This document shows positions 16,899-28,401 of a stretch of 64,000 bases of DNA, one piece after another. The DNA lies in contig QPMI01000457.1 in NCBI GenBank assembly GCA_004431415.1, positions 62,001 to 126,000 of the forward strand, written 5' to 3'. A program made the position numbers and the translations under genes. The notes beneath the pieces are model-generated. The model was not told where the DNA came from. It saw only the letters and a program-made list of their open reading frames with translations, and did not search any database. The stretch's first letter is position 1. Each line of letters begins with the position of its first letter. The DNA is from Cyanophora paradoxa CCMP329. Its lineage: Eukaryota > Plantae > Glaucophyta.

Positions 16899-18333
16899 AT
16901 GGCGCGAGCTCGAGGCTGCAGCCCCGAAGAGAAGGTGCTCCTTCTGGGGTTCGAGAAGCGCGCTGTGTGGCCGACAGCGGAGATCGAGCGCGCCGGCCCC
17001 GCGAACGTGCGCGCGCTGGACGTCGGCCGCAACTCGCTGGCGAGCGTCCCCGGGGAAGAACTCGCGAAGCTGACGGGCCTGGAGGTGCTCCTGCTGTACA
17101 GCAACAGCATTGCAGCGCTCCCGCCGGAGATCGCGCGGCTCGCCCGCCTGCAGCAGCTGAACGTCAGTTACAACCAGCTCGCGGAGCTGCCGCCGCAGAT
17201 CGGGCAGCTCGTGTGCCTGCAAGAGCTAGACTTGAGATCGAACCAGCTGACGGCTCTGCCCGCGGAGATCGGGGCGCTCGCGTTTCTGAAGACGCTGAAC
17301 GTGAGCTCCAACCAGCTGGCGGCTCTGCCGGAGGAGATTGGGCGGCTCGTGCGCCTGGCGCATCTGTATGTAAGCTACAACCGGCTGCAGGCGCTTCCTC
17401 CGGAGATCGGGCACCTCCCGAGCCTCCAGCAGCTGGCCGTGAGCTTCAACCAGCTTGCGGCGCTGCCGTCCGAGATCGGGCAGCTGTCTGGCCTGCAGGA
17501 GCTGCGCGCGAGCGGCAACAGCCTGTCGGCGCTGCCGCCGGAGATCGGGCGGCTGGAGTGTCTGCAGATGCTGGACGTGGGAGAGAACCGGCTCACAGCG
17601 CTGCCGGCGGAGATCGGGCGGCTGGCGGCCTTGCAGGAGCTGGACGTCCGTCGAAACCCCCTCACAGACATGCCAGAGCACGCCCGCGGGTCCGGCGAGG
17701 CCGCCCTCGCCTACCTCCGCTCCCTCCCTCGGCCCGCCGCGGCCGCTCCGCGCACGGCCGCGGTGCGCTCAAGCTGCGCGCGACTTCCGTCCGCTCTCCA
17801 TCCTCTGATTCTGCCCCGCCGTTCTCCAGGACCACATTAGACAGGCCGTGCACGCGGGCCCCGCTGCCGCGGCTCCGGTGCGCACGGGGTTCGGCCCCAG
17901 GCCTGCCCGCCGCGCCGCCCCCGCTCCGTGCGAGTCACCGCCGCTCCCATCGCAGGCCGGAGCCTCGGCGGACGTGCCCCCGCAGCCAGCGCAGCAACCG
18001 CCGACGCCGGCGGGGCCACCGGACTGGGCGGCGGCGCTGAAAGCCGAGAACGCGGCACTCCGGAGGCGCCTCGCGGCGCTGGAGGGGCGCCTGGGGCTCT
18101 ACGAGGGCTGGGCCGTCCCGGCCGCGCTCGGCGGCGGCGGCCACGGCCAGCCGCAGTGGGGCGCGGGGGAGCTGGAGGCGGCGGCGGAGCGGCTGCGCGC
18201 GGCGGCGGCGCGGGTGGAGGAGCTGCGGGTGGAGGCGCGGGCGGCGGCCCTCGCGGAGGGGCGCGCCAAGCGGAGGCGCTGCGAGGAGCCCGACGCCGAG
18301 CCGGGGCCGGGGCCCCCGGGCCCCCCCAGCTGA
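16899..18333 (+). CDS. Leucine-rich repeat protein (~10 x 23-aa LRRs) with C-terminal coiled coil
   Basis: Repeats of LxxLxVSxNQLxALPxEIGxL, capped by NPL...ALAYLRSL; one intron at about 17763-17830, then ALKAENAALRRRLAALEGRL...AAAERLRAAAARVEEL. Confidence 0.9.
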
Positions 18334-18816
18334 CCGCCGTCGCCTGCCTCGGCCTAATCCCGCCCGGCGGCTCCCTGCAGGCCCCGCCCGCTCCGCCAGC
18401 TGCAGACCCCAGCCGCGGCCGGCCTCGCGCTCGCGATCGCCTCGCCCCTGAGCGGCCCCTCCCCGCGGTCCGCGGCTCGTGATCGGGATTCGGGATCCGT
18501 CAACGCCGCGACCGGCCGCCGACCGGCGGCGCCGGCGCCGCCGGCCGATCGCGATCGCGACTCGCGAGCTCGAGCCGGCGCCTACGTTCAGAGAAAAAAG
18601 AGACTCCCATGAGTAAAAAAGCAATAGTTGGGCCCTGCGTAGCCTGCGTAGCCGAACGTAGGGCTGCGCCGGCCCTTCTAGCTACTTGCTTCTCTTGCTG
18701 CTTCTCGCATATTGCGTATGGGAGCCACCTGCAGTTGCTTAAGCTCATCGATATCGCATTCTCGAGTACGCATACGTAGCGCTAGCGTGTCCACGGCAAC
18801 GACGGCCGCAGCTACC

Positions 18817-21157
18817 ATGGCCACCACGAAGACGCCGACGCCCACGCCGACGCGCGTGATCAACGCATTCGCCGCCTACGAGGCGGGCGCGCCCGTCAAG
18901 CCGGTGCGCATGCGCTCGTCCCGCGCGCGCGCGCCCTCGCCCGCCGCCCCGGCCTAGGCCTCGGGCCCCGATGTCTCTTGAGCTCTGATCGCGATTTGGA
19001 TCCATACTCGTCATGACATGCAAGCGCAGTACCAGTACGAGGCGAAGCCGCTCGGGCCTCTCGACGTCGAAGTCAAAATTCGGTTTTGTGAGTCTGGTTT
19101 GAATTCGAATGTCGCGATCGGAGAATGTGTATTTGCAGCTGAATTCGAGCAGGCGGCATCTGCCAGAGCGACATCGGCCTGCTTCAGGGCAAGTTTGGTC
19201 CCTAGTGCGTACGCCTTAAGCCACGTATACCTCAAATCGTATCATTGAATATCATGACACCGGTCCCCGCGCCCCTGGCCGCCCGCGCAGCTCGGTGTAT
19301 CCGCAGGTCTGCGGCCATGAGGTGAGTGATGTCGATATATATGTCTTAACAGCTGCAGCAGCTGCCCTAGTGCTCGAGATGGCTCGGGTGCGGCTCGAGC
19401 GCCGATCGGAATCGCGCACAGATTGTGGGCGAGATCACCGCCGTCGGCTCCGCCGTCCCTCACCTCAAGATCGGCGAGACGGTTCGAATTCGCGCTCTGC
19501 ATCTTACAAGCTTAAGCGAAGTCTCGTTTCGAACGCTGACGCGGGTCCGGCTCCGGCCGCGGGCGCTCGCTCGCGCAGGTCGGCGTCGGGGCGCAGCGGT
19601 CATCGTGCATGGGCTGCAAGTCGTGCTCCAGCGGCGAGAACCAGCACTGCCCCCAGCAAACGAGCACCTGCTTCGGCGGGGAGAAGGGCGGCTTTGCCGG
19701 TAATCTGCTCCATCGATCCGCCTTCGCCTGATTTCATTATTGATTTCGCGTCCCTTTCAATCAAAATCTAGATTACATCCGGGTCCCGTCGTTCTTCGCC
19801 TTCCCCATCCCGAAGGTTCGAATGAAATTCGCGCTGCGTCGCGGCGCATGCACGTGCAATACTGTCTGGCCGCTGGAATTGAATTCGTAACCGTCGTTCA
19901 TGATCAGGAGATCAAGCCGGAGCACGCGGGGCCTCTCCTCTGCGGGGGCGCCACTGGTGCGCGCGCGCGCCCCCCGAATCCGAAGGATCCTCGCGACCCA
20001 GGCCATGTGGTCACGCGCATGCGCCCCGCGGCGCCGGCAGTGTACTCGCCGATCTCGGAGCACTGCGCGCCGGGGATGAAGGTCGCCGTCGTCGGCATCG
20101 GCGGCCTCGGCCGTGCGTGCCCGCTCGCGCGCGGCCCTCGCAACCCTCGCCTTGCATTTGCCGCCCCCGGGCAGGCCCTGGCCTGGCCCGGACCGACCCT
20201 CGGGACCGCAGACCTCGCCGTTCTGTTCGCCGTCGCGCGCGGCTGCGAGGTGCCTAGTCCTCCACGCCACGCGCCGCCCCGCCCCAGTCCGACCCGGCCG
20301 GACCCGGGGCAGACGTGGGCGATCTCGACGTCGAAGGAGAAGCGGGCGGAGGCCCTCGCGATGGGCGCCAGGGGCTTCATCAACAGCAGGGACCCCGACC
20401 AGCTCAAGGCGCCCCCGGCCCCCGGCCCGCTGAAGGCCGCCGCCCCGGCCGGCGCCCTCTGACTTGAGCTTGTCTCGCGCGCAGGCGCAGGCGGACCAGT
20501 TCGACGTGGTGCTCGTGACGGTCTCTGCGGCCCTCGACTGGCAGCCGTACCTCGCCCTCCTCGCCCGCCGCGGTCCACGCCCGCCCGGCCCGGCCCGCCG
20601 CTACAGGTGCGATATATCGATGCCTAAACGAAAGTCAACTCCGCAGGCAAGCTGGTGTTCGTGAGCGCGATCCCGGGCGACATCACGGTGAACATCCTCA
20701 TGCAGCTCGTCATGAAACAGACCAGCGTCCACGGCAGGTGCGCGCCCGCCCGCGGCTGCCCCGCTTTCTCGGCAATTTTCGTGCCCACGCTCGCTTGCAA
20801 TTGGCTGCCCATATTCGTTACGGCCTAAATTTAACCGTGCAGCTGGATTTCGGGGCGGCGCGGCATGCAGGAGATGCTGCACGTGCGCTCTGTTTCGAAA
20901 TTAATTCTTGATCTCTCATTAACCGTGCCGCACTGCGGCGCGCGTGCGCAGTTTGCGGCCGTGCACAGGATTCAGCCCCTCGTCGAGCTCTACCCTTTCG
21001 ACAAGGTGTGCTGCTCCCGCGCGCTATGATCTGGCCATGGCCAGCCCGCGCCCCGCCCCGGGCAGACATCGACGCCGCCATGCAATCGCAGATCAACGAG
21101 GCGCTGCAGCGCGTCGTCGACAACAAGGCGCGCTACCGCGTCGTCCTCCGCCACTAA
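18817..21157 (+). CDS. Zn-dependent, probably NADP-dependent alcohol dehydrogenase/aldehyde reductase (CAD/Ahr-YjgB-like MDR), ~15 introns
   Basis: CGICQSD, GHE, structural Zn motif CMGCKSC...C, GPLLCGGATVY, GIGGLGHLA, LDWQPY and C-terminal KARYRVVL*. Confidence 0.93.
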
Positions 21158-21361
21158 ATATATATATAGCCCCGTGGCTGCTCTGTATATATCCTGCCAA
21201 CTTGAGGAATCCGATGATTGTATTCGAGTGCGCACATGCACCGCGGCCGTGGCACCTGCAGCTAGCGCTGACAGCAATTTCTTTGAGATACCCGATCGTC
21301 AGTTGCAGGGTGCGGGCCGGGGCCGGCCACGGCAGGGCACAGAATTCCGAATATGTTTGGG

Positions 21362-22249: not shown

Positions 22250-25200
22250 ATGGATCCAGTGGCCATCCTTCGCGGCATCGTTCAGGTGCCTCGACCGGCC
22301 GCCGCGCGAAGCCGCGCCGCCGCTGAGCGCGGGCCCCATGATCAGGTCGCCCTCACGATCCGCGACGTGGCCCAGACAGTCAAGCTCAACAAGGCCAAAT
22401 GCCAGCGGCTGGCTCGACGCGTGCAAGACCTGATTCCAACCCTCGAAGGTGCGCGCGCGCCGCGCGCATATGCATGCCGCGATTGCATTTGCAAGCGGAG
22501 CGCGGGGCGCATGCGCAGCGCTGTCGAGCTCGCCGCGGGCGTGCAGCGAGCAGGCGCGCGGGGCGGCGGAGTCGCTGCTGTGCGCGGTGCAGGAGGCGGA
22601 GGCGCTCGTGCGCAAGTCGAGCGCGCGGGGCGGCTCGGCGCTGCAGCGGGCGGCGGCGCTGGTGACGCTCTGGGCGGACGCGGAGGCCTTCGACGAGGTC
22701 CACGTCGGAATGGACCGCGCCCTCTCTACTCTCACCGCCGTCCTCCAGGCGCCCGCCCGCCCGCCTCTGGAGTCTATAAAGGCGCCTTCCGCGCCCCGCC
22801 CCGCGCGCGCTGACGTCGCTCAGGTGCGGCTGGAGGAGCGGGCAGCGACGGCGGAGGAGCGGGCGGCGGACGCGGCGGAGGACGCGCGGGCGCTGCAGGA
22901 GGCCCTGGCCGAGGCCGGCGACGCGCGGGCCCGGCGGGACGCCGGCGCTGCCGAGCCCCGCGTCGTCAAGGAGCGGGAGGTCAAGGTGCCCCCTCCCCGC
23001 CCGCCCGCGCCCCCGCGCCCCGCCCCGCCTCGCTGAGGCCCCTGGAAGGTCCGCTGGGCTGAGCGGCTGGGCGTGGCGGGGAGCGGCGTCTTCCGCGGCG
23101 AGTGGCTCGGCCTCCCCGTCGCCGTCAAGCTGGCCCGCCCCGCCCCCGCCCGCCCGCCCTCCTGAAGGCTGTGCTGAGCGGCGGGGCCGTGCAGGTGCCG
23201 TCGGGCGGAGCGAGCGGGGCCGGGCGGAGGCGGAGCGGCAGGCGGCGCTGCACGGGGCGGCGCGGCACGCGCACGTCGTCGGGCTCCTGGGGGCCTGCGT
23301 GCGCCCCGCCGGCCGCTCCGCCGCCGACGGGGGCCCGAGGGCGAGGCCCTCCTCCTCGTCATGGAGCTCCTCGAGGGTCCGCCGCCCCCGCCCGCCCGCC
23401 CCGCGCGCTCTGCCTGGGCCCTTGTATTGACCGGGGCACGGGCCAGGCGGGACGCTGGCGGAGGCGGCGCGGGCCGGGCGGCGCGGCGGGCGGCGCCGGA
23501 GGAGCGGGCGGCGCAGCTGCTGCCCGTTGCGAGGGCCCTGCACCACCTCTCGAGCCTGCCCGACCCCATCGTCCACGGCGCGCCCGGCCCGGCACCGGCC
23601 CTGACTCCGGCGGCGCCGCCCTGACGCTAGTCCGGTGCAGGGGACGTGCGACCGGCGAACGTGCTGCTGACGGCGGGGGGCGTCCCCAAGCTCGCCAACT
23701 TCCGCGCCGCCCGCCGCGCCTCGGGGGCGCGCGCCGGGGCCGCCCCCCGGCCCCCCGACTCGCCCACCTACGCCCCGCCCGTGCGCTCGGTCCCTCGCCC
23801 CGCCCCGTTCCGGCCAGAGCCCGAGCGGGCGGGCGCGGGCAGGAGCTGTGGGTGGCGGGGGCCGGCCCCAGCGAGGCGGGAGATGTCTACTCCTTCGGCT
23901 GCACCCTCTACGCGCGCCCGCCCCGCCCGCCCCGCCCCCCCGCGCCCTTAGCTGACGGTCCTGGGCAGGAGGCGGTGGCGGGGCGGGCGCCGTGGGAGGG
24001 CACGGGGCGCGAGGAGGCCTTCCGGCGGGCGCACGGGGTCGGGGAGCGGCCGCCGATGGACGGGACGTGGCCGGGCCCGCTCCGCAGCCTCCTCGCGAGC
24101 TGCTGGCAGGCCGACCCCGCCCGCCGCCCCGACTTCGGCCTCGTCGTCCAGGCGCGCGCCCTAGCTCCCAAGGCGCTGCCTTCGCCTGCCCGGCGCACTC
24201 CTCACCACGCCGTCGCAGACGCTGGAGTCCCTGGCGGGCCTGGGGCCCGCCCCCGAGCTGGGGCGGCCCTTCCGCCCCGAGCTGCCGGCGCCGCCGCTGG
24301 TGGTGGACCCCAGCGGCCCGCCCCGCTGCCTCCGCAGCATCGCTGAGGCGCTCCGGCGGGCCGCCCCGGGCCAGGACATCCACATCCGCCCCGGCCTGTG
24401 CGCCCCCGCTCTTCCCTGTTCGCTTCGGCGCCGGCGTGTGAGCGGGGGCCGCCAGGTACGACGAGGGGGCGCCGCTGGTGCTGGACCGCGACGTGCGCCT
24501 CATCGCCTCCCCCGGGGCCGTCCTCGAGTGCCGCGCCGGCCCCGCCCTGCACTGCCGCGGGCCGGCGGCGCCCTACGTCTCGGGCCTTGCGGTGCGGGGC
24601 CGGGGCGCGCGGCACGTGGCCGTCTTCGTCTCGGAGGGCAGCCGCGCCCGCCTGGATGGGGTCGAGGTCACCTCCGAGGGCCTCGCCTGCATCGAGGCCC
24701 GCCCCCCGCCGCCGCTCTCTCGGCGCCGCCCTTACGATTCGCGTCAGGTGCGGGACCCCGGGACGCGGCCGCAGCTGCGGGGGTGCGGGGTGCGGGACGG
24801 CCCGCGGGCCGGAGTGCTGGTGCGCCTCGGGGCCGAGGCGCTCCTGGAGGCCTGCGACGTCCGCGGCTGCGCCCGCGCCGGCGTCGAGGTCTGCGGGGCG
24901 CGCCCCACGCTCCGCGCCTGCCGCATCTCCGGCGGCGCCGGCGCCGGCGTCTTCGTGCACTGCGCCGGCGGGGGCCTCGTCGAGGGCTGCACCATCGAGG
25001 GCAACCGCAAGGCCGGGGTGGAGGTCGCCGGCGAGGGCGCCTGCCCGACCCTCCGCGGCAACGCCGTGCGTGGCTGCGGCGGGCCCGGCATCGCCTTCCT
25101 CGGCGGGGCGAGCGGCGCGGCCGAGGAGAACGCGGTGGCCGGCTGCGGCGGGGCCGGCTTCGAGGTGGACGCCTCGGCGCGCCCGCTCCTCCGCGGCAAC

Positions 25201-25828
25201 ACCCTCGACGGGCGCGAGTTCGGGCCCCGCCGCGACCCCTCGAGCTCCTCCTCCCCCTCCCCGCAGCTGAGCGGGGGCGGGCACCGACGGCCCCAGCTCC
25301 CCTGCGCCGGGCGCCCCCGGTCCGCCTCCCTCCCGACCCTCGCCGTCCACATCCCGGACGCCGCCGCCTCCGAGGCCGCCCCGGGCCCCGGCCGCCCTCC
25401 TCGCCGCCCCAGCCGCCCCCGGACCGCCCCGCCCGCCCGCCACCAGGACCCGCCCCGCCTCCGCTGGGAAGAATGCCGAGCCGCCTCGCTCCCACCCGGC
25501 GGCCCCGCAGGCGCTGGTGCGCGCCCCTCGTCAGCACGACCGGCCCCGCCCGCCCGCCCACGCCGCCCTCGCGCAGGGGCGCGGGCGGGCGCAGTCGGCG
25601 GCGGACCTGCGCATCGGGCGGCCGGCCTCTCCCGAGCCTGAGTGCGAGCCCGGTGAGGCCGCGGCGCGCCCCAAGGGTGCCCCGCCCCCCGCCCATCCCA
25701 GTCTAGCCCGCCCCGGCCTCTCCACTCTAAGCCTCGCTCGGGCAGGTGCGCTGCGGCGGCGGGCCTCGGCGGTCTCGACGGCCGTGCGCGTGCTCGAGGC
25801 GATCGCCGCCAAGGGCGCCAGCAGCTGA
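22250..25828 (+). CDS. MLKL-like protein: N-terminal four-helix bundle + TKL-type pseudokinase + right-handed beta-helix (PbH1/CASH) domain
   Basis: Exons 22250-22285, 22346-22448, 22519-22748 and 22824-22985 give MDPVAILRGIVQVALTIRDVAQTVKLNKAKCQRLARRVQDLIPTLE...VQEAEALVRKSSAR...AFDEVHVGMDRALSTLTAVLQV. Kinase motifs: VAVK, HAHVVGLLGAC, HGDVRPANVLL, KLANFR, YAPPE, DVYSFG, CWQADPARRP. Beta-helix: SIAEAL...IHIRPGLY followed by GVxVxxxxxxxLxxCxI repeats. Two or three 1-bp frameshifts at 23195-23480; 3' end uncertain (25641 or 25828). Confidence 0.85.
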
Positions 25829-26287
25829 GCCCGCTCGGCGACGGCGTTCCCAAAGGCGCACCTCGTCTGCTTCTTTTGCATGTAGTAGCTACAGGAATAC
25901 GTTTCGTTGGCAGCTGCAGGCACGGCGATTTAAAACGCTGGCCATGGCTCCACGGTTATTGTCTACGCCGCCCCCTCTCGTTTCTGGCCTCCTAGGATCA
26001 CGGGGCTCAGCGGCTCTCGCCTTTGATAAACGCCTCAACCTGGCAAGCTTACTCTGGATCTGCAAAGGCTTGGTACGGTTTTCGAATTAGAGGAAAATGT
26101 ACATACGATACCGCGCTTCCTGCAGCTGTACGCAGGCTCGGTTTGGATTTATATATGTACATGTATACGATATGTATCGCACTCCGCTAAATCTCATGAT
26201 CATAGTCATGATCAGCTTGTCTAGATCTGCTGGCCGTGGGCTGCAGCTGGTCCAGCGGGCCCGGAGGCCTCGCGACCGCGCTCATGA

Positions 26288-28228
26288 TCAGGCCGCGAAT
26301 TCGAGCGAGGCGAGGGAGGCGGCCCCGGCGGCGAGGAGGAGGGCGAGGGCGGCGGCGAGGGGCCCGCCGGGGCGGCCCGGGCCGCCCGAGGCGCGCGGGG
26401 CGGCGAGGGCTGCCAGGCGCGCCTCCTCCTGCGCCAGCCGCCCGCACTCGGCGGGAGGGCGGCCCCCGTACCCCGGCGACGAGATCAGCGGCCCCTGGCA
26501 GAACTGCTCGAGGGGGTACCCCGCCTTGACCTCGTGGCACTGCGCGTTGCCCCAGCACCTGCGCGCGCGCCGGTGAGTCTCTTCTCGACGGGGAAGGATC
26601 GGGCGGGGGGTACGGGGGCACCAGGCGCATCCGCGGCTGGCGGCGCACTCGGCGCAGGAGCTCCGCGAGGGGCACGCGACCCGCGGGCAGTCCCCCTTCT
26701 GCTCCGAACATCAGAGCAAACCAAGATTTAAGTTTAATGGAAGGGAGGGGGCACCACGAGGGCGGTGCGGTTGCAGGGTACGGAGAAGCGGCCGGAGACG
26801 GGCTCCACCTCCACACACGCGTTCGCGTCCCCGCACCTGAGGGGGGGGGGAGTCAGGGGCGGGGGGGCGAAGGGTGGGACGGGTGGGACGGGTGTAGCGG
26901 CCGGCGCGCCAGCCGCAGGTGCGCTGGGCGGTGCAGGCGTCGCAGGAGGGGAACGCCGCGCAGGGCGGGGGCGCGGCGGCCGCCCGGGCCCCCGCCGGCC
27001 CCCCCGCCGCCCCGCACTGCCCGCCCCAGTACGACCACCTGCGCGCGTAAGACAAAGAGGGGGGAGGAACCGGGGTGGGGGTAGGGCGGACTTGGTGCAG
27101 GGCATGGGGGCGGCGCCGGTGAGCGGGGCGGCGGAGGAGCCCTGCCCGATGAGCGAGGAGGCGGGGGAGCCGCCCCCGGAGCCGAAGGCCGGCAGCACGC
27201 TCCGCACGCAGCCCTGCCAGTGCCGGGGGAGGGGGGGTACAGCGTCGGAGTGCCGGGTACACGTTTTGAGCAGAGAAAGGAATCGGGGGGGGGGGGGGGG
27301 GGGGAGGACCTGGACGTCGTCGCACCAGCCGCAGCCGGCGCGGAAGGTGCACTCGGCGCAGGTCGCGTACCCCAGGCAGGAGCCGCCCTGCGTCAGCCAG
27401 CACTGCTCGGGGCGCGCGACGAAGCGGCCCCCAGCCGACCCCTCCGACCCTGCGCGCGCGTCTCTCGGGTCTTGGAGGGGAGCGGGTAGGGTAAGTGAAA
27501 TGGTGCCGGCGCGCCGTCGGCGGCGCCGCAGGGGATCATCGGCTTGTCCCCGGTGGCCCGGAGGCACTGGCCGGCCCGCTGTCTTCAGCCGCCGGCGGGC
27601 AGCGGGGAGGGCGGAGGAGGCCCGCGGCGGACCTTGCTCCGGGCCAGGCACCAGCCGCAGCCGAACTCGGACGCGCACTGCTCGCAGGCCCCCAAGTTGT
27701 CGCACTGGTTTCGCGTCAGCGCTAGCGCTGGCGGGGAGAGCCGCGCTGGCGGGGCGCCGCGCGGCCGGACCTTGGACGGGCAGTAGCCGGCGTTAGTTAC
27801 AGAGCAGCCGGAGGAAGCGCACCGAGCTCCGTTCGAGCACCAGCCGCACTTCAATGGCGAGCCGACGCACTCGTCGCAGCCCTTGATGAAAGAGCACGGG
27901 TCCGCTGCGAGCAGGAGCGTAAGCGACGTAATCGGACGATTCAACGCGACGTGAAGCTCAAGCGCGCGGGGAGGCGTGGGCGGTGGCGGAGGTGGAGGTG
28001 GTGCCGCCTGCAAACGCCGTCGTTCAGGTCAGGTACCAGTTCAAATTGCTGATGAAACCGATTTCTCACCGCGGCGGGCTGATCGAGGCTCGCGGCGGGC
28101 CGATCGGAATTTGCGGTCGAGCTTTGCGGTTGCGCCCAGGCTCCGCCGGTCAGCCCAAGCACGCAAACCGCAATCGCGAGAGTGCGCAGCTGAGCGCAAG
28201 GCACGCGGGAGTCGCGGCGGGCCGGCAT
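26288..28228 (-). CDS. Secreted/GPI-type PSI (plexin-semaphorin-integrin) repeat protein
   Basis: Signal peptide LAIAVCVLGLTGGAWA; four CxxxxxCxxC...CGWC repeats (e.g. CSFIKGCDECVGSPLKCGWC, CDNLGACEQCASEFGCGWC); hydrophobic tail PLAAALALLLAAGAASLASLEFAA*. Confidence 0.8.
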
Positions 28229-28401
28229 TTGCCTCGAGTTCCAATTTGGGCGTACCCCCCTCAAAACACGACTGGCCTGGCCCGCAGCTGAAGAGTGGCT
28301 CCAGGGCGCGCCGCGGTGTAAGGCCTTCGAGCCTGCGCCCACGCGAACCCATCGATCGAGCCCGAGGGTCGGGAAACGTCCAGCCCGGGAGGTGATCTAC
28401 A

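What the first reader, a model, noticed from the sequence alone, without database searches (positions are those of the whole stretch)
24290..25210. Right-handed beta-helix fused C-terminal to the MLKL-like module: a built-in sensor?
Seen: directly after the pseudokinase, in the same spliced frame, come LVVDPSG...SIAEALRRAAPGQDIHIRPGLYDE..LVLDRDVRLI and about 7-8 ~23-aa parallel beta-helix turns (GVLVRLGAEALLEACDV, GVFVHCAGGGLVEGCTI, GVEVAGEGACPTLRGNAV). Established: this is the PbH1/CASH pectin-lyase-like fold, also the substrate-binding region of FBXO11. Canonical MLKLs end after the pseudokinase and are triggered by an upstream kinase. Inference: a single-chain sensor-switch-killer in which the beta-helix binds a glycan or pathogen protein. 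I do not recall this architecture being described.
Basis: partly seen in the sequence, partly recalled or inferred. Interest (0 to 1): 0.85.

Follow-up and report, generated by a model that had tools for sequence, protein, structure and literature searches.

The report
Algal MLKL-like protein with beta-helix sensor
In the alga Cyanophora paradoxa, a repeat-built beta-helix that the same genome also attaches to TIR and other immune-type enzyme domains is spliced onto the end of a protein built like the cell-death protein MLKL, which suggests a one-piece sensor-and-killer receptor, though neither sensing nor killing has been tested and the reference gene has frame breaks.

Summary
Observation confirmed. 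The window is Cyanophora paradoxa. A right-handed beta-helix of about nine coils (24297-25212; Pfam PF13229 E 3e-19; AlphaFold pLDDT 94) follows the kinase C-lobe in one spliced frame. An RNA-type contig crosses intron 24152-24218 without mismatch, and there is no ATG for a separate gene. The helix belongs to a 16-member Cyanophora family whose other members carry TIR, SAM-TIR-ARM, lipase or RING heads. Variation among their repeats falls on one face. Bacterial relatives carry TIR, caspase, CHAT, SIR2, PNP or kinase heads. This supports, but does not show, a modular sensor role. The ligand may as well be a protein (FBXO11 is a close relative) as a glycan. Weak points: the MLKL-like head rests on a sub-threshold Pfam hit plus a weak Atlas hit, and two or three unresolved frame breaks lie in the kinase N-lobe exons. 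I found no paper describing 4HB + kinase + beta-helix. This scan has already noted this gene and similar builds elsewhere in the genome. Verdict: new variant of all-in-one effector-sensor receptors, function untested.

The parts
22250..22285 (+). exon 1, start codon, first helix of the MLKL-like four-helix bundle
   Evidence: sequence, GT-AG intron with branch-like motif; not covered by RNA contigs
22346..22448 (+). exon 2, helices 1-2 of the 4HB-like head
   Evidence: Pfam MLKL_N E 7.3e-5, 22.8 bits, cut-off 27
22519..22748 (+). exon 3, remaining helices of the 4HB-like head
   Evidence: ESM Atlas first hit for 22521-22985 is an MLKL_N/DUF7792/RPW8 cluster, score 0.78, a lead only; no Pfam hit alone
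22824..22985 (+). exon 4, charged helical brace-like linker
   Evidence: RNA contig joins it to exon 5 (X1 record 1)
23049..23132 (+). exon 5, kinase N-lobe start: degenerate Gly loop, VAVK lysine kept
23195..23376 (+). exon 6, alphaC to hinge; alphaC Glu position is Gln; frame break at its 5' junction and a second frame change near 23320-23340 (a slip, or a 41-nt intron 23299-23339)
   Evidence: codon model and kinase profile by frame; no read coverage shown
23447..23577 (+). exon 7, alphaD-alphaE to catalytic His; frame break near 23475-23490
   Evidence: no read coverage shown
23641..23780 (+). exon 8, catalytic loop (HGD..N kept across the junction), DFG replaced by NFR
23843..23911 (+). 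exon 9, alphaF
23969..24151 (+). exon 10, end of kinase C-lobe
   Evidence: Pfam PK_Tyr_Ser-Thr E 2.6e-5; RNA contig
24152..24218 (+). 67-nt GC-AG intron that joins kinase and beta-helix in phase 0
   Evidence: skipped in X1 record 2 with 0 mismatches; unspliced in X7 record 23
24219..24397 (+). exon 11: Pro-rich linker (24219-24296) and beta-helix N-cap (from 24297)
24456..24696 (+). exon 12: end of cap and first coils
   Evidence: RNA joints on both sides; alignment with homologues
24748..25212 (+). exon 13, first part: remaining beta-helix coils
   Evidence: Pfam PF13229 E 2.9e-19; RNA contigs
25213..25828 (+). low-complexity Pro/Ser/Arg tail over several exons (inner boundaries uncertain), ending in a short helix and stop in last exon 25746-25828
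   Evidence: RNA continuous to 25358 and spliced into 25746; EukProt model ends at the same stop
25829..26182 (+). 3' untranslated region (minimum extent)
   Evidence: RNA contigs X1 record 6, X2 record 12, X3 record 18; strand not shown by contigs

Best explanation
A cytosolic, single-chain immune or stress receptor. The C-terminal beta-helix is a variable ligand-binding module from a family expanded in Cyanophora and swapped between effector heads. Here it is fused to an MLKL-like four-helix bundle, a brace and a probably inactive TKL-type kinase. Shown: the spliced kinase-to-helix fusion, the fold, the paralogue family with different heads, and variation on one face of the family's repeats. 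Inferred: binding of a non-self or damage ligand (more likely a protein or peptide, possibly a glycan) clusters the protein or moves the pseudokinase, which frees the bundle to oligomerise at a membrane, so no upstream RIPK3-like kinase is needed. The frame breaks are taken to be long-read assembly errors.
For: Fusion in RNA, and no separate start codon. The helix sits in a 16-gene Cyanophora clade, SH-aLRT 99, and its nearest rows are two TIR + beta-helix proteins. Paralogue heads: TIR (5 genes, one of them SAM-TIR-ARM), Lipase_3, RING/coiled coil, WW, weak PIN-like. In 22 double-coil units from 6 paralogues, positions 4, 5, 8, 10 and their equivalents 27, 28, 31, 33 have 1.9-2.9 bits of entropy against at most 1.3 elsewhere, as on an LRR binding face. 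Non-algal relatives carry TIR, S/T kinase, caspase, CHAT, SIR2 and PNP heads; the best structural match in the Atlas is a bacterial TIR + beta-helix cluster, TM 0.89. Two separate exons of the head point to MLKL_N. Kinase: DFG to NFR and alphaC Glu to Gln. All-in-one 4HB/HeLo receptors and HELL-kinase proteins are known in fungi (PMC12881547).
Against: No functional data of any kind. The MLKL_N hit is under the cut-off and covers 30 residues; the Atlas score of 0.78 is below what the tool calls reliable; there is no sequence hit to solved MLKL structures. Two or three frame breaks are unresolved and no contig bridges the whole gene. This copy's own coils are short (about 9) and diverged, so the variability was measured on paralogues, and many positions in that test were fixed by the search pattern. 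No dN/dS could be computed. Two bacterial loci inspected are not obvious defence islands, and no PADLOC model matches the helix part. Several paralogues have heads with no immune link.
Confidence: 0.45

Rival explanations
1. A non-lethal signalling scaffold. The beta-helix binds an endogenous protein, as the FBXO11 CASH domain does. The pseudokinase and the 4HB-like bundle act as adaptors, as MLKL_N-like domains on plant U-box and ARM proteins are thought to (own knowledge). No pore is formed.
For: FBXO11 orthologues are among the top 150 hits and match at TM 0.83. A clade of Cyanophora helices plus FBXO11 is not rejected: AU p 0.75, and the constrained tree scored better than the quick free search. 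CASH is described as the substrate-recognition domain (PMC13394945). The Atlas cluster matching the head also carries DUF7792. Paralogues include RING-type heads.
Against: The commonest recognisable partner of this helix in the genome and in bacteria is TIR, followed by other defence-type enzymes. The family is lineage-expanded, clustered (five copies on one contig) and variable on one face.
Confidence: 0.27
2. A recently broken copy of such a receptor. The frame breaks in exons 6-7 are real, so the transcript gives a garbled or truncated protein and the helix is not part of a working MLKL-like chain.
For: Two or three frame changes within about 350 nt. Low contig depth of 3-5. The automatic gene model starts only after the breaks. 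The coils are more diverged than in paralogues.
Against: All breaks shift the frame the same way and lie at or near G runs in an 82% GC stretch that no listed short-read contig covers, while covered stretches show no differences; this is the pattern of unpolished long-read error. There are no stop codons, codon bias is strong on both sides of each break, and four introns are correctly spliced.
Confidence: 0.15
3. The helix is a carbohydrate-active enzyme or lectin (lyase/epimerase type) acting on a polysaccharide, and the fusion regulates that activity.
For: All solved structures it resembles are glycan lyases, epimerases, esterases or tailspikes. One bacterial TIR + beta-helix gene lies between sugar-transporter operons.
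Against: Identity to those enzymes is only 10-18%. The helix has short regular turns without the long groove loops. The face varies among paralogues instead of keeping a catalytic set. I saw no signal peptide in the N-terminus, by inspection only.
Confidence: 0.1
4. The beta-helix is a separate neighbouring gene.
For: Only one sample gives the bridging contig, and a contig is not a single molecule.
Against: The contig removes exactly a canonical in-phase intron with 180 and 107 letters on the two sides. There is no ATG in 24100-24480 and no AT-rich intergenic stretch.
Confidence: 0.03

Closest known systems
Animal MLKL and Arabidopsis MLKLs (4HB + brace + pseudokinase)
   Same: Same order and size of head, brace-like helix and TKL-type kinase with lost catalytic motifs.
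   Different: An extra C-terminal beta-helix and tail. The kinase is degenerate in a different way (DFG to NFR, catalytic Asp kept). No RIPK3- or EDS1-type activator identified. Killing not shown.
Cereal kinase fusion proteins and MLKL-K (Pm13, PMC11297308; R3AK, bioRxiv 10.64898/2026.08.07.743466)
   Same: MLKL_NTD plus kinase used in immunity, arising independently; integrated domains act as sensors in other kinase fusion proteins.
   Different: Those MLKLs have putatively active kinases and no C-terminal repeat sensor; R3AK needs a separate NLR.
All-in-one fungal HeLo/HELL-NLRs and plant RPW8-type NLRs (PMC12881547, PMC9815663)
   Same: Membrane-attacking helical head and a repeat domain at the far end of one chain.
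   Different: The switch is a pseudokinase instead of a NACHT/NB-ARC ATPase; the repeat is a beta-helix instead of WD40, TPR, ANK or LRR.
FBXO11 / DRE-1 CASH (PbH1) domain
   Same: Homologous beta-helix with the same cap motif and 23-residue coils; binds protein substrates.
   Different: No F-box or UBR zinc finger here; about 9 coils against 19; placement relative to FBXO11 unresolved in trees.
Bacterial TIR-, caspase-, CHAT-, SIR2-, PNP- or S/T-kinase + beta-helix proteins (uncharacterised)
   Same: Same helix subfamily, always C-terminal to an interchangeable enzyme head; some have helical domain + kinase + beta-helix (P0036, P0070, P0084).
   Different: Their kinases keep HRD and DFG. The N-terminal helical domain that was modelled shows no similarity to MLKL 4HB by profile or fold. 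I found no paper or PADLOC model describing them as a system.

Membership tests
Right-handed parallel beta-helix (PbH1/CASH, PF13229) | Profile match above the curated cut-off | tested here: met
   69.7 bits against 25.9
Right-handed parallel beta-helix (PbH1/CASH, PF13229) | Three-sheet solenoid with N-terminal capping helix | tested here: met
FBXO11 orthologues | F-box and UBR zinc finger around the CASH repeats | tested here: not met
   no such domains in any exon or in the gene model
FBXO11 orthologues | Beta-helix groups with FBXO11 in a tree | tested here: inconclusive
   separate in free trees, but a joint clade is not rejected, AU p 0.75
MLKL / MLKL-like | N-terminal 4HB of the MLKL_N family | tested here: inconclusive
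   exon 2 E 7e-5 but under cut-off; exons 3-4 Atlas top hit 0.78; whole domain not searched or folded because the joined step was left out
MLKL / MLKL-like | Brace helices between 4HB and kinase | tested here: inconclusive
   a charged, helix-forming 54-residue exon lies there and is spliced to the kinase; no structure
MLKL / MLKL-like | Kinase fold with lost catalytic motifs | tested here: met
   DFG to NFR, alphaC Glu to Gln, degenerate Gly loop; Lys and HGD..N kept; inactivity itself is a prediction
MLKL / MLKL-like | Protein ends after the pseudokinase | tested here: not met
   frame continues into the beta-helix
MLKL / MLKL-like | 4HB-dependent membrane permeabilisation and death | not testable with these tools
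   needs expression assays
MLKL / MLKL-like | One intact reading frame from 4HB to kinase | tested here: inconclusive
   2-3 frame breaks in the reference, uncovered by reads
NLR (STAND) receptors | NACHT or NB-ARC NTPase | tested here: not met
   none in the exons scanned; works-like resemblance only
Polysaccharide lyases / epimerases of the pectin-lyase fold | Conserved catalytic residues and substrate groove | tested here: inconclusive
   10-18% identity; binding face variable across paralogues; no assay

The most novel reading that the evidence does not exclude
Glaucophyte algae and many bacteria share an undescribed class of receptors in which a diversifying beta-helix plays the part that LRRs play in NLRs, and this gene is the version that wires it through a pseudokinase straight to an MLKL-type pore-forming bundle: necroptosis-like death in a unicellular alga from a single self-triggering protein.
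Probability: 0.3. Interest if true: 0.85.

Novelty: new variant of a known kind. Interest (0 to 1): 0.6.

Why it matters
If right, it adds a new sensor scaffold (the FBXO11-type beta-helix) to intracellular immunity and shows an MLKL-type executioner that carries its own trigger. It would extend 4HB-based regulated death to a unicellular member of the earliest-branching plastid lineage. It is directly testable by head-only expression, helix deletion and helix swaps with the TIR paralogues, whose NADase output gives a simple read-out for ligand hunting. If wrong, it remains a clear case of domain shuffling of a lineage-expanded repeat.

Full report
Source. The beta-helix ORF matches EukProt model tig00020723_g13449.t1 at 100%. 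Paralogues with the same naming are labelled Cyanophora paradoxa. The region is 73-82% GC with introns of 51-93 nt, many of them GC-AG.

The upstream module. Exon 2 hits Pfam MLKL_N at E 7.3e-5 (22.8 bits, cut-off 27). The non-overlapping exon 3-4 stretch has an MLKL_N/DUF7792/RPW8 cluster as first Atlas hit, at 0.78. Two weak but separate pointers make the assignment likely, not proven; PDB sequence searches gave nothing. The kinase keeps the VAVK lysine and HGD..N, but has NFR for DFG and Gln at the alphaC Glu position, so it is a predicted pseudokinase. In the reference the frame changes at the exon 5/6 junction, near 23320-23340 and near 23475-23490. The middle change could instead be a 41-nt intron with an unusual acceptor, hence two or three breaks. 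All go the same way, sit at or near G runs and lie where no short-read contig was listed, which fits long-read error; this is unverified. The EukProt model starts after the breaks and lacks the head.

What the helix is. A search of 1.84 billion representatives gave 4494 hits. By cap similarity the closest are all Cyanophora gene models. With a further search the family has at least 16 members, which form one clade (SH-aLRT 99). The nearest rows to this gene are two TIR + beta-helix proteins (g15404, g13970). Heads in the family are TIR (five, one SAM-TIR-ARM), Lipase_3, RING/coiled coil, WW, a weak PIN-like domain, and several unassigned. Five members lie on one contig. Across 22 double-coil units from six paralogues, eight positions that stack 23 residues apart carry 1.9-2.9 bits of entropy while the other unconstrained positions carry 0.3-1.3. 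That is the pattern of a repeat scaffold with one variable binding face. Caveats: the search pattern fixed many positions, and the window's own coils were too diverged to enter the test.

Outside the alga, the same helix subfamily sits C-terminal to TIR, Ser/Thr kinase, caspase, CHAT, SIR2, PNP, Hsp70 and F-box domains (the 66 N-termini were hand-picked, so the counts are not frequencies). The best Atlas structure match is a bacterial TIR + beta-helix cluster (TM 0.89); FBXO11 follows at 0.83. PADLOC models match the heads only, and two loci inspected are not evident defence islands. Some bacterial proteins have helical domain + active kinase + beta-helix; a Gemmataceae relative has the same head and kinase with a different, LRR-like tail. 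The modelled head is not 4HB-like. Whether the algal family came from bacteria or from an FBXO11-like ancestor is unresolved (AU p 0.75).

Mechanism. Best reading (0.45): a cytosolic one-chain receptor in which ligand binding to the helix clusters the protein or shifts the pseudokinase and frees the bundle to attack a membrane. Shown: fusion, fold, shuffling between heads, one variable face. Inferred: ligand, switch, killing. The closest characterised homologue of the helix, FBXO11 CASH, recognises protein substrates (PMC13394945), so a protein ligand is at least as likely as a glycan. Rivals: non-lethal scaffold (0.27), recently broken copy (0.15), carbohydrate-active domain (0.10), separate gene (0.03).

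Comparison and novelty. Animal and Arabidopsis MLKLs end with the pseudokinase and need upstream activators; cereal MLKL-Ks have putatively active kinases and arose independently (PMC11297308); wheat R3AK kills as helper to an NLR. All-in-one HeLo/RPW8 receptors and HELL-kinase proteins are known (PMC12881547). I found no description of 4HB + kinase + beta-helix, nor of this helix as an immune sensor, in the held library, which lacks most subscription papers. The principle is known and the combination appears new: a new variant of a known kind. This scan has already noted the same gene (s1-528590) and similar builds elsewhere in the genome (s1-524994, s1-595977, s1-525085, s1-525450). I confirmed the TIR + beta-helix paralogues myself but could not retrieve a second MLKL + kinase + helix gene.

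Method note. 

Verdict. Real, spliced, apparently undescribed architecture with circumstantial support for a sensor role and no functional proof. Interest 0.6.

Noticed in passing
window 16899-17837 (+): A leucine-rich-repeat gene (Pfam LRR_14 E 1e-37) lies about 4 kb upstream; its repeats score best against bacterial LRR-effector models, probably only through regular LRRs.
   Followed up: partly
window about 26100-28300 (-): A convergent neighbour built of Cys-rich PSI (plexin) repeats; its 3' end lies close to the 3' UTR of the MLKL-like gene.
   Followed up: partly
window 18712-21160 (+): A multi-exon zinc-binding alcohol dehydrogenase-like gene (weak Pfam hit) directly upstream.
   Followed up: no
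window 24697-24747 and about 25320-25446: The EukProt model keeps intron 24697-24747, which RNA contigs splice out, and splices the tail at a site that RNA reads through to at least 25358.
   Followed up: yes
P0029 (Cyanophora g18254): A long, homogeneous beta-helix array flanked on both sides by Lipase_3 domains; EDS1-type lipase folds are immune hubs in plants (own knowledge).
   Followed up: no
L001:4001-7246 and L002:3992-6241: An unclassified seven-helix bacterial domain precedes a Ser/Thr kinase and is followed by either a beta-helix or an LRR-like repeat; no Pfam family and no PDB fold match. L001 is filed under Alcaligenaceae but its closest relative here is from Gemmataceae, so it may be mis-binned.
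   Followed up: partly
P0002, P0056, P0092, P0095, P0107, P0117, P0123 (N-terminal 120-150 residues): A recurring bacterial helical N-terminal domain in front of the same beta-helix; P0002's has no Pfam match.
   Followed up: no
L004:5001-6701: A bacterial TIR + beta-helix gene sits between two sugar ABC-transporter operons rather than in a defence island.
   Followed up: no
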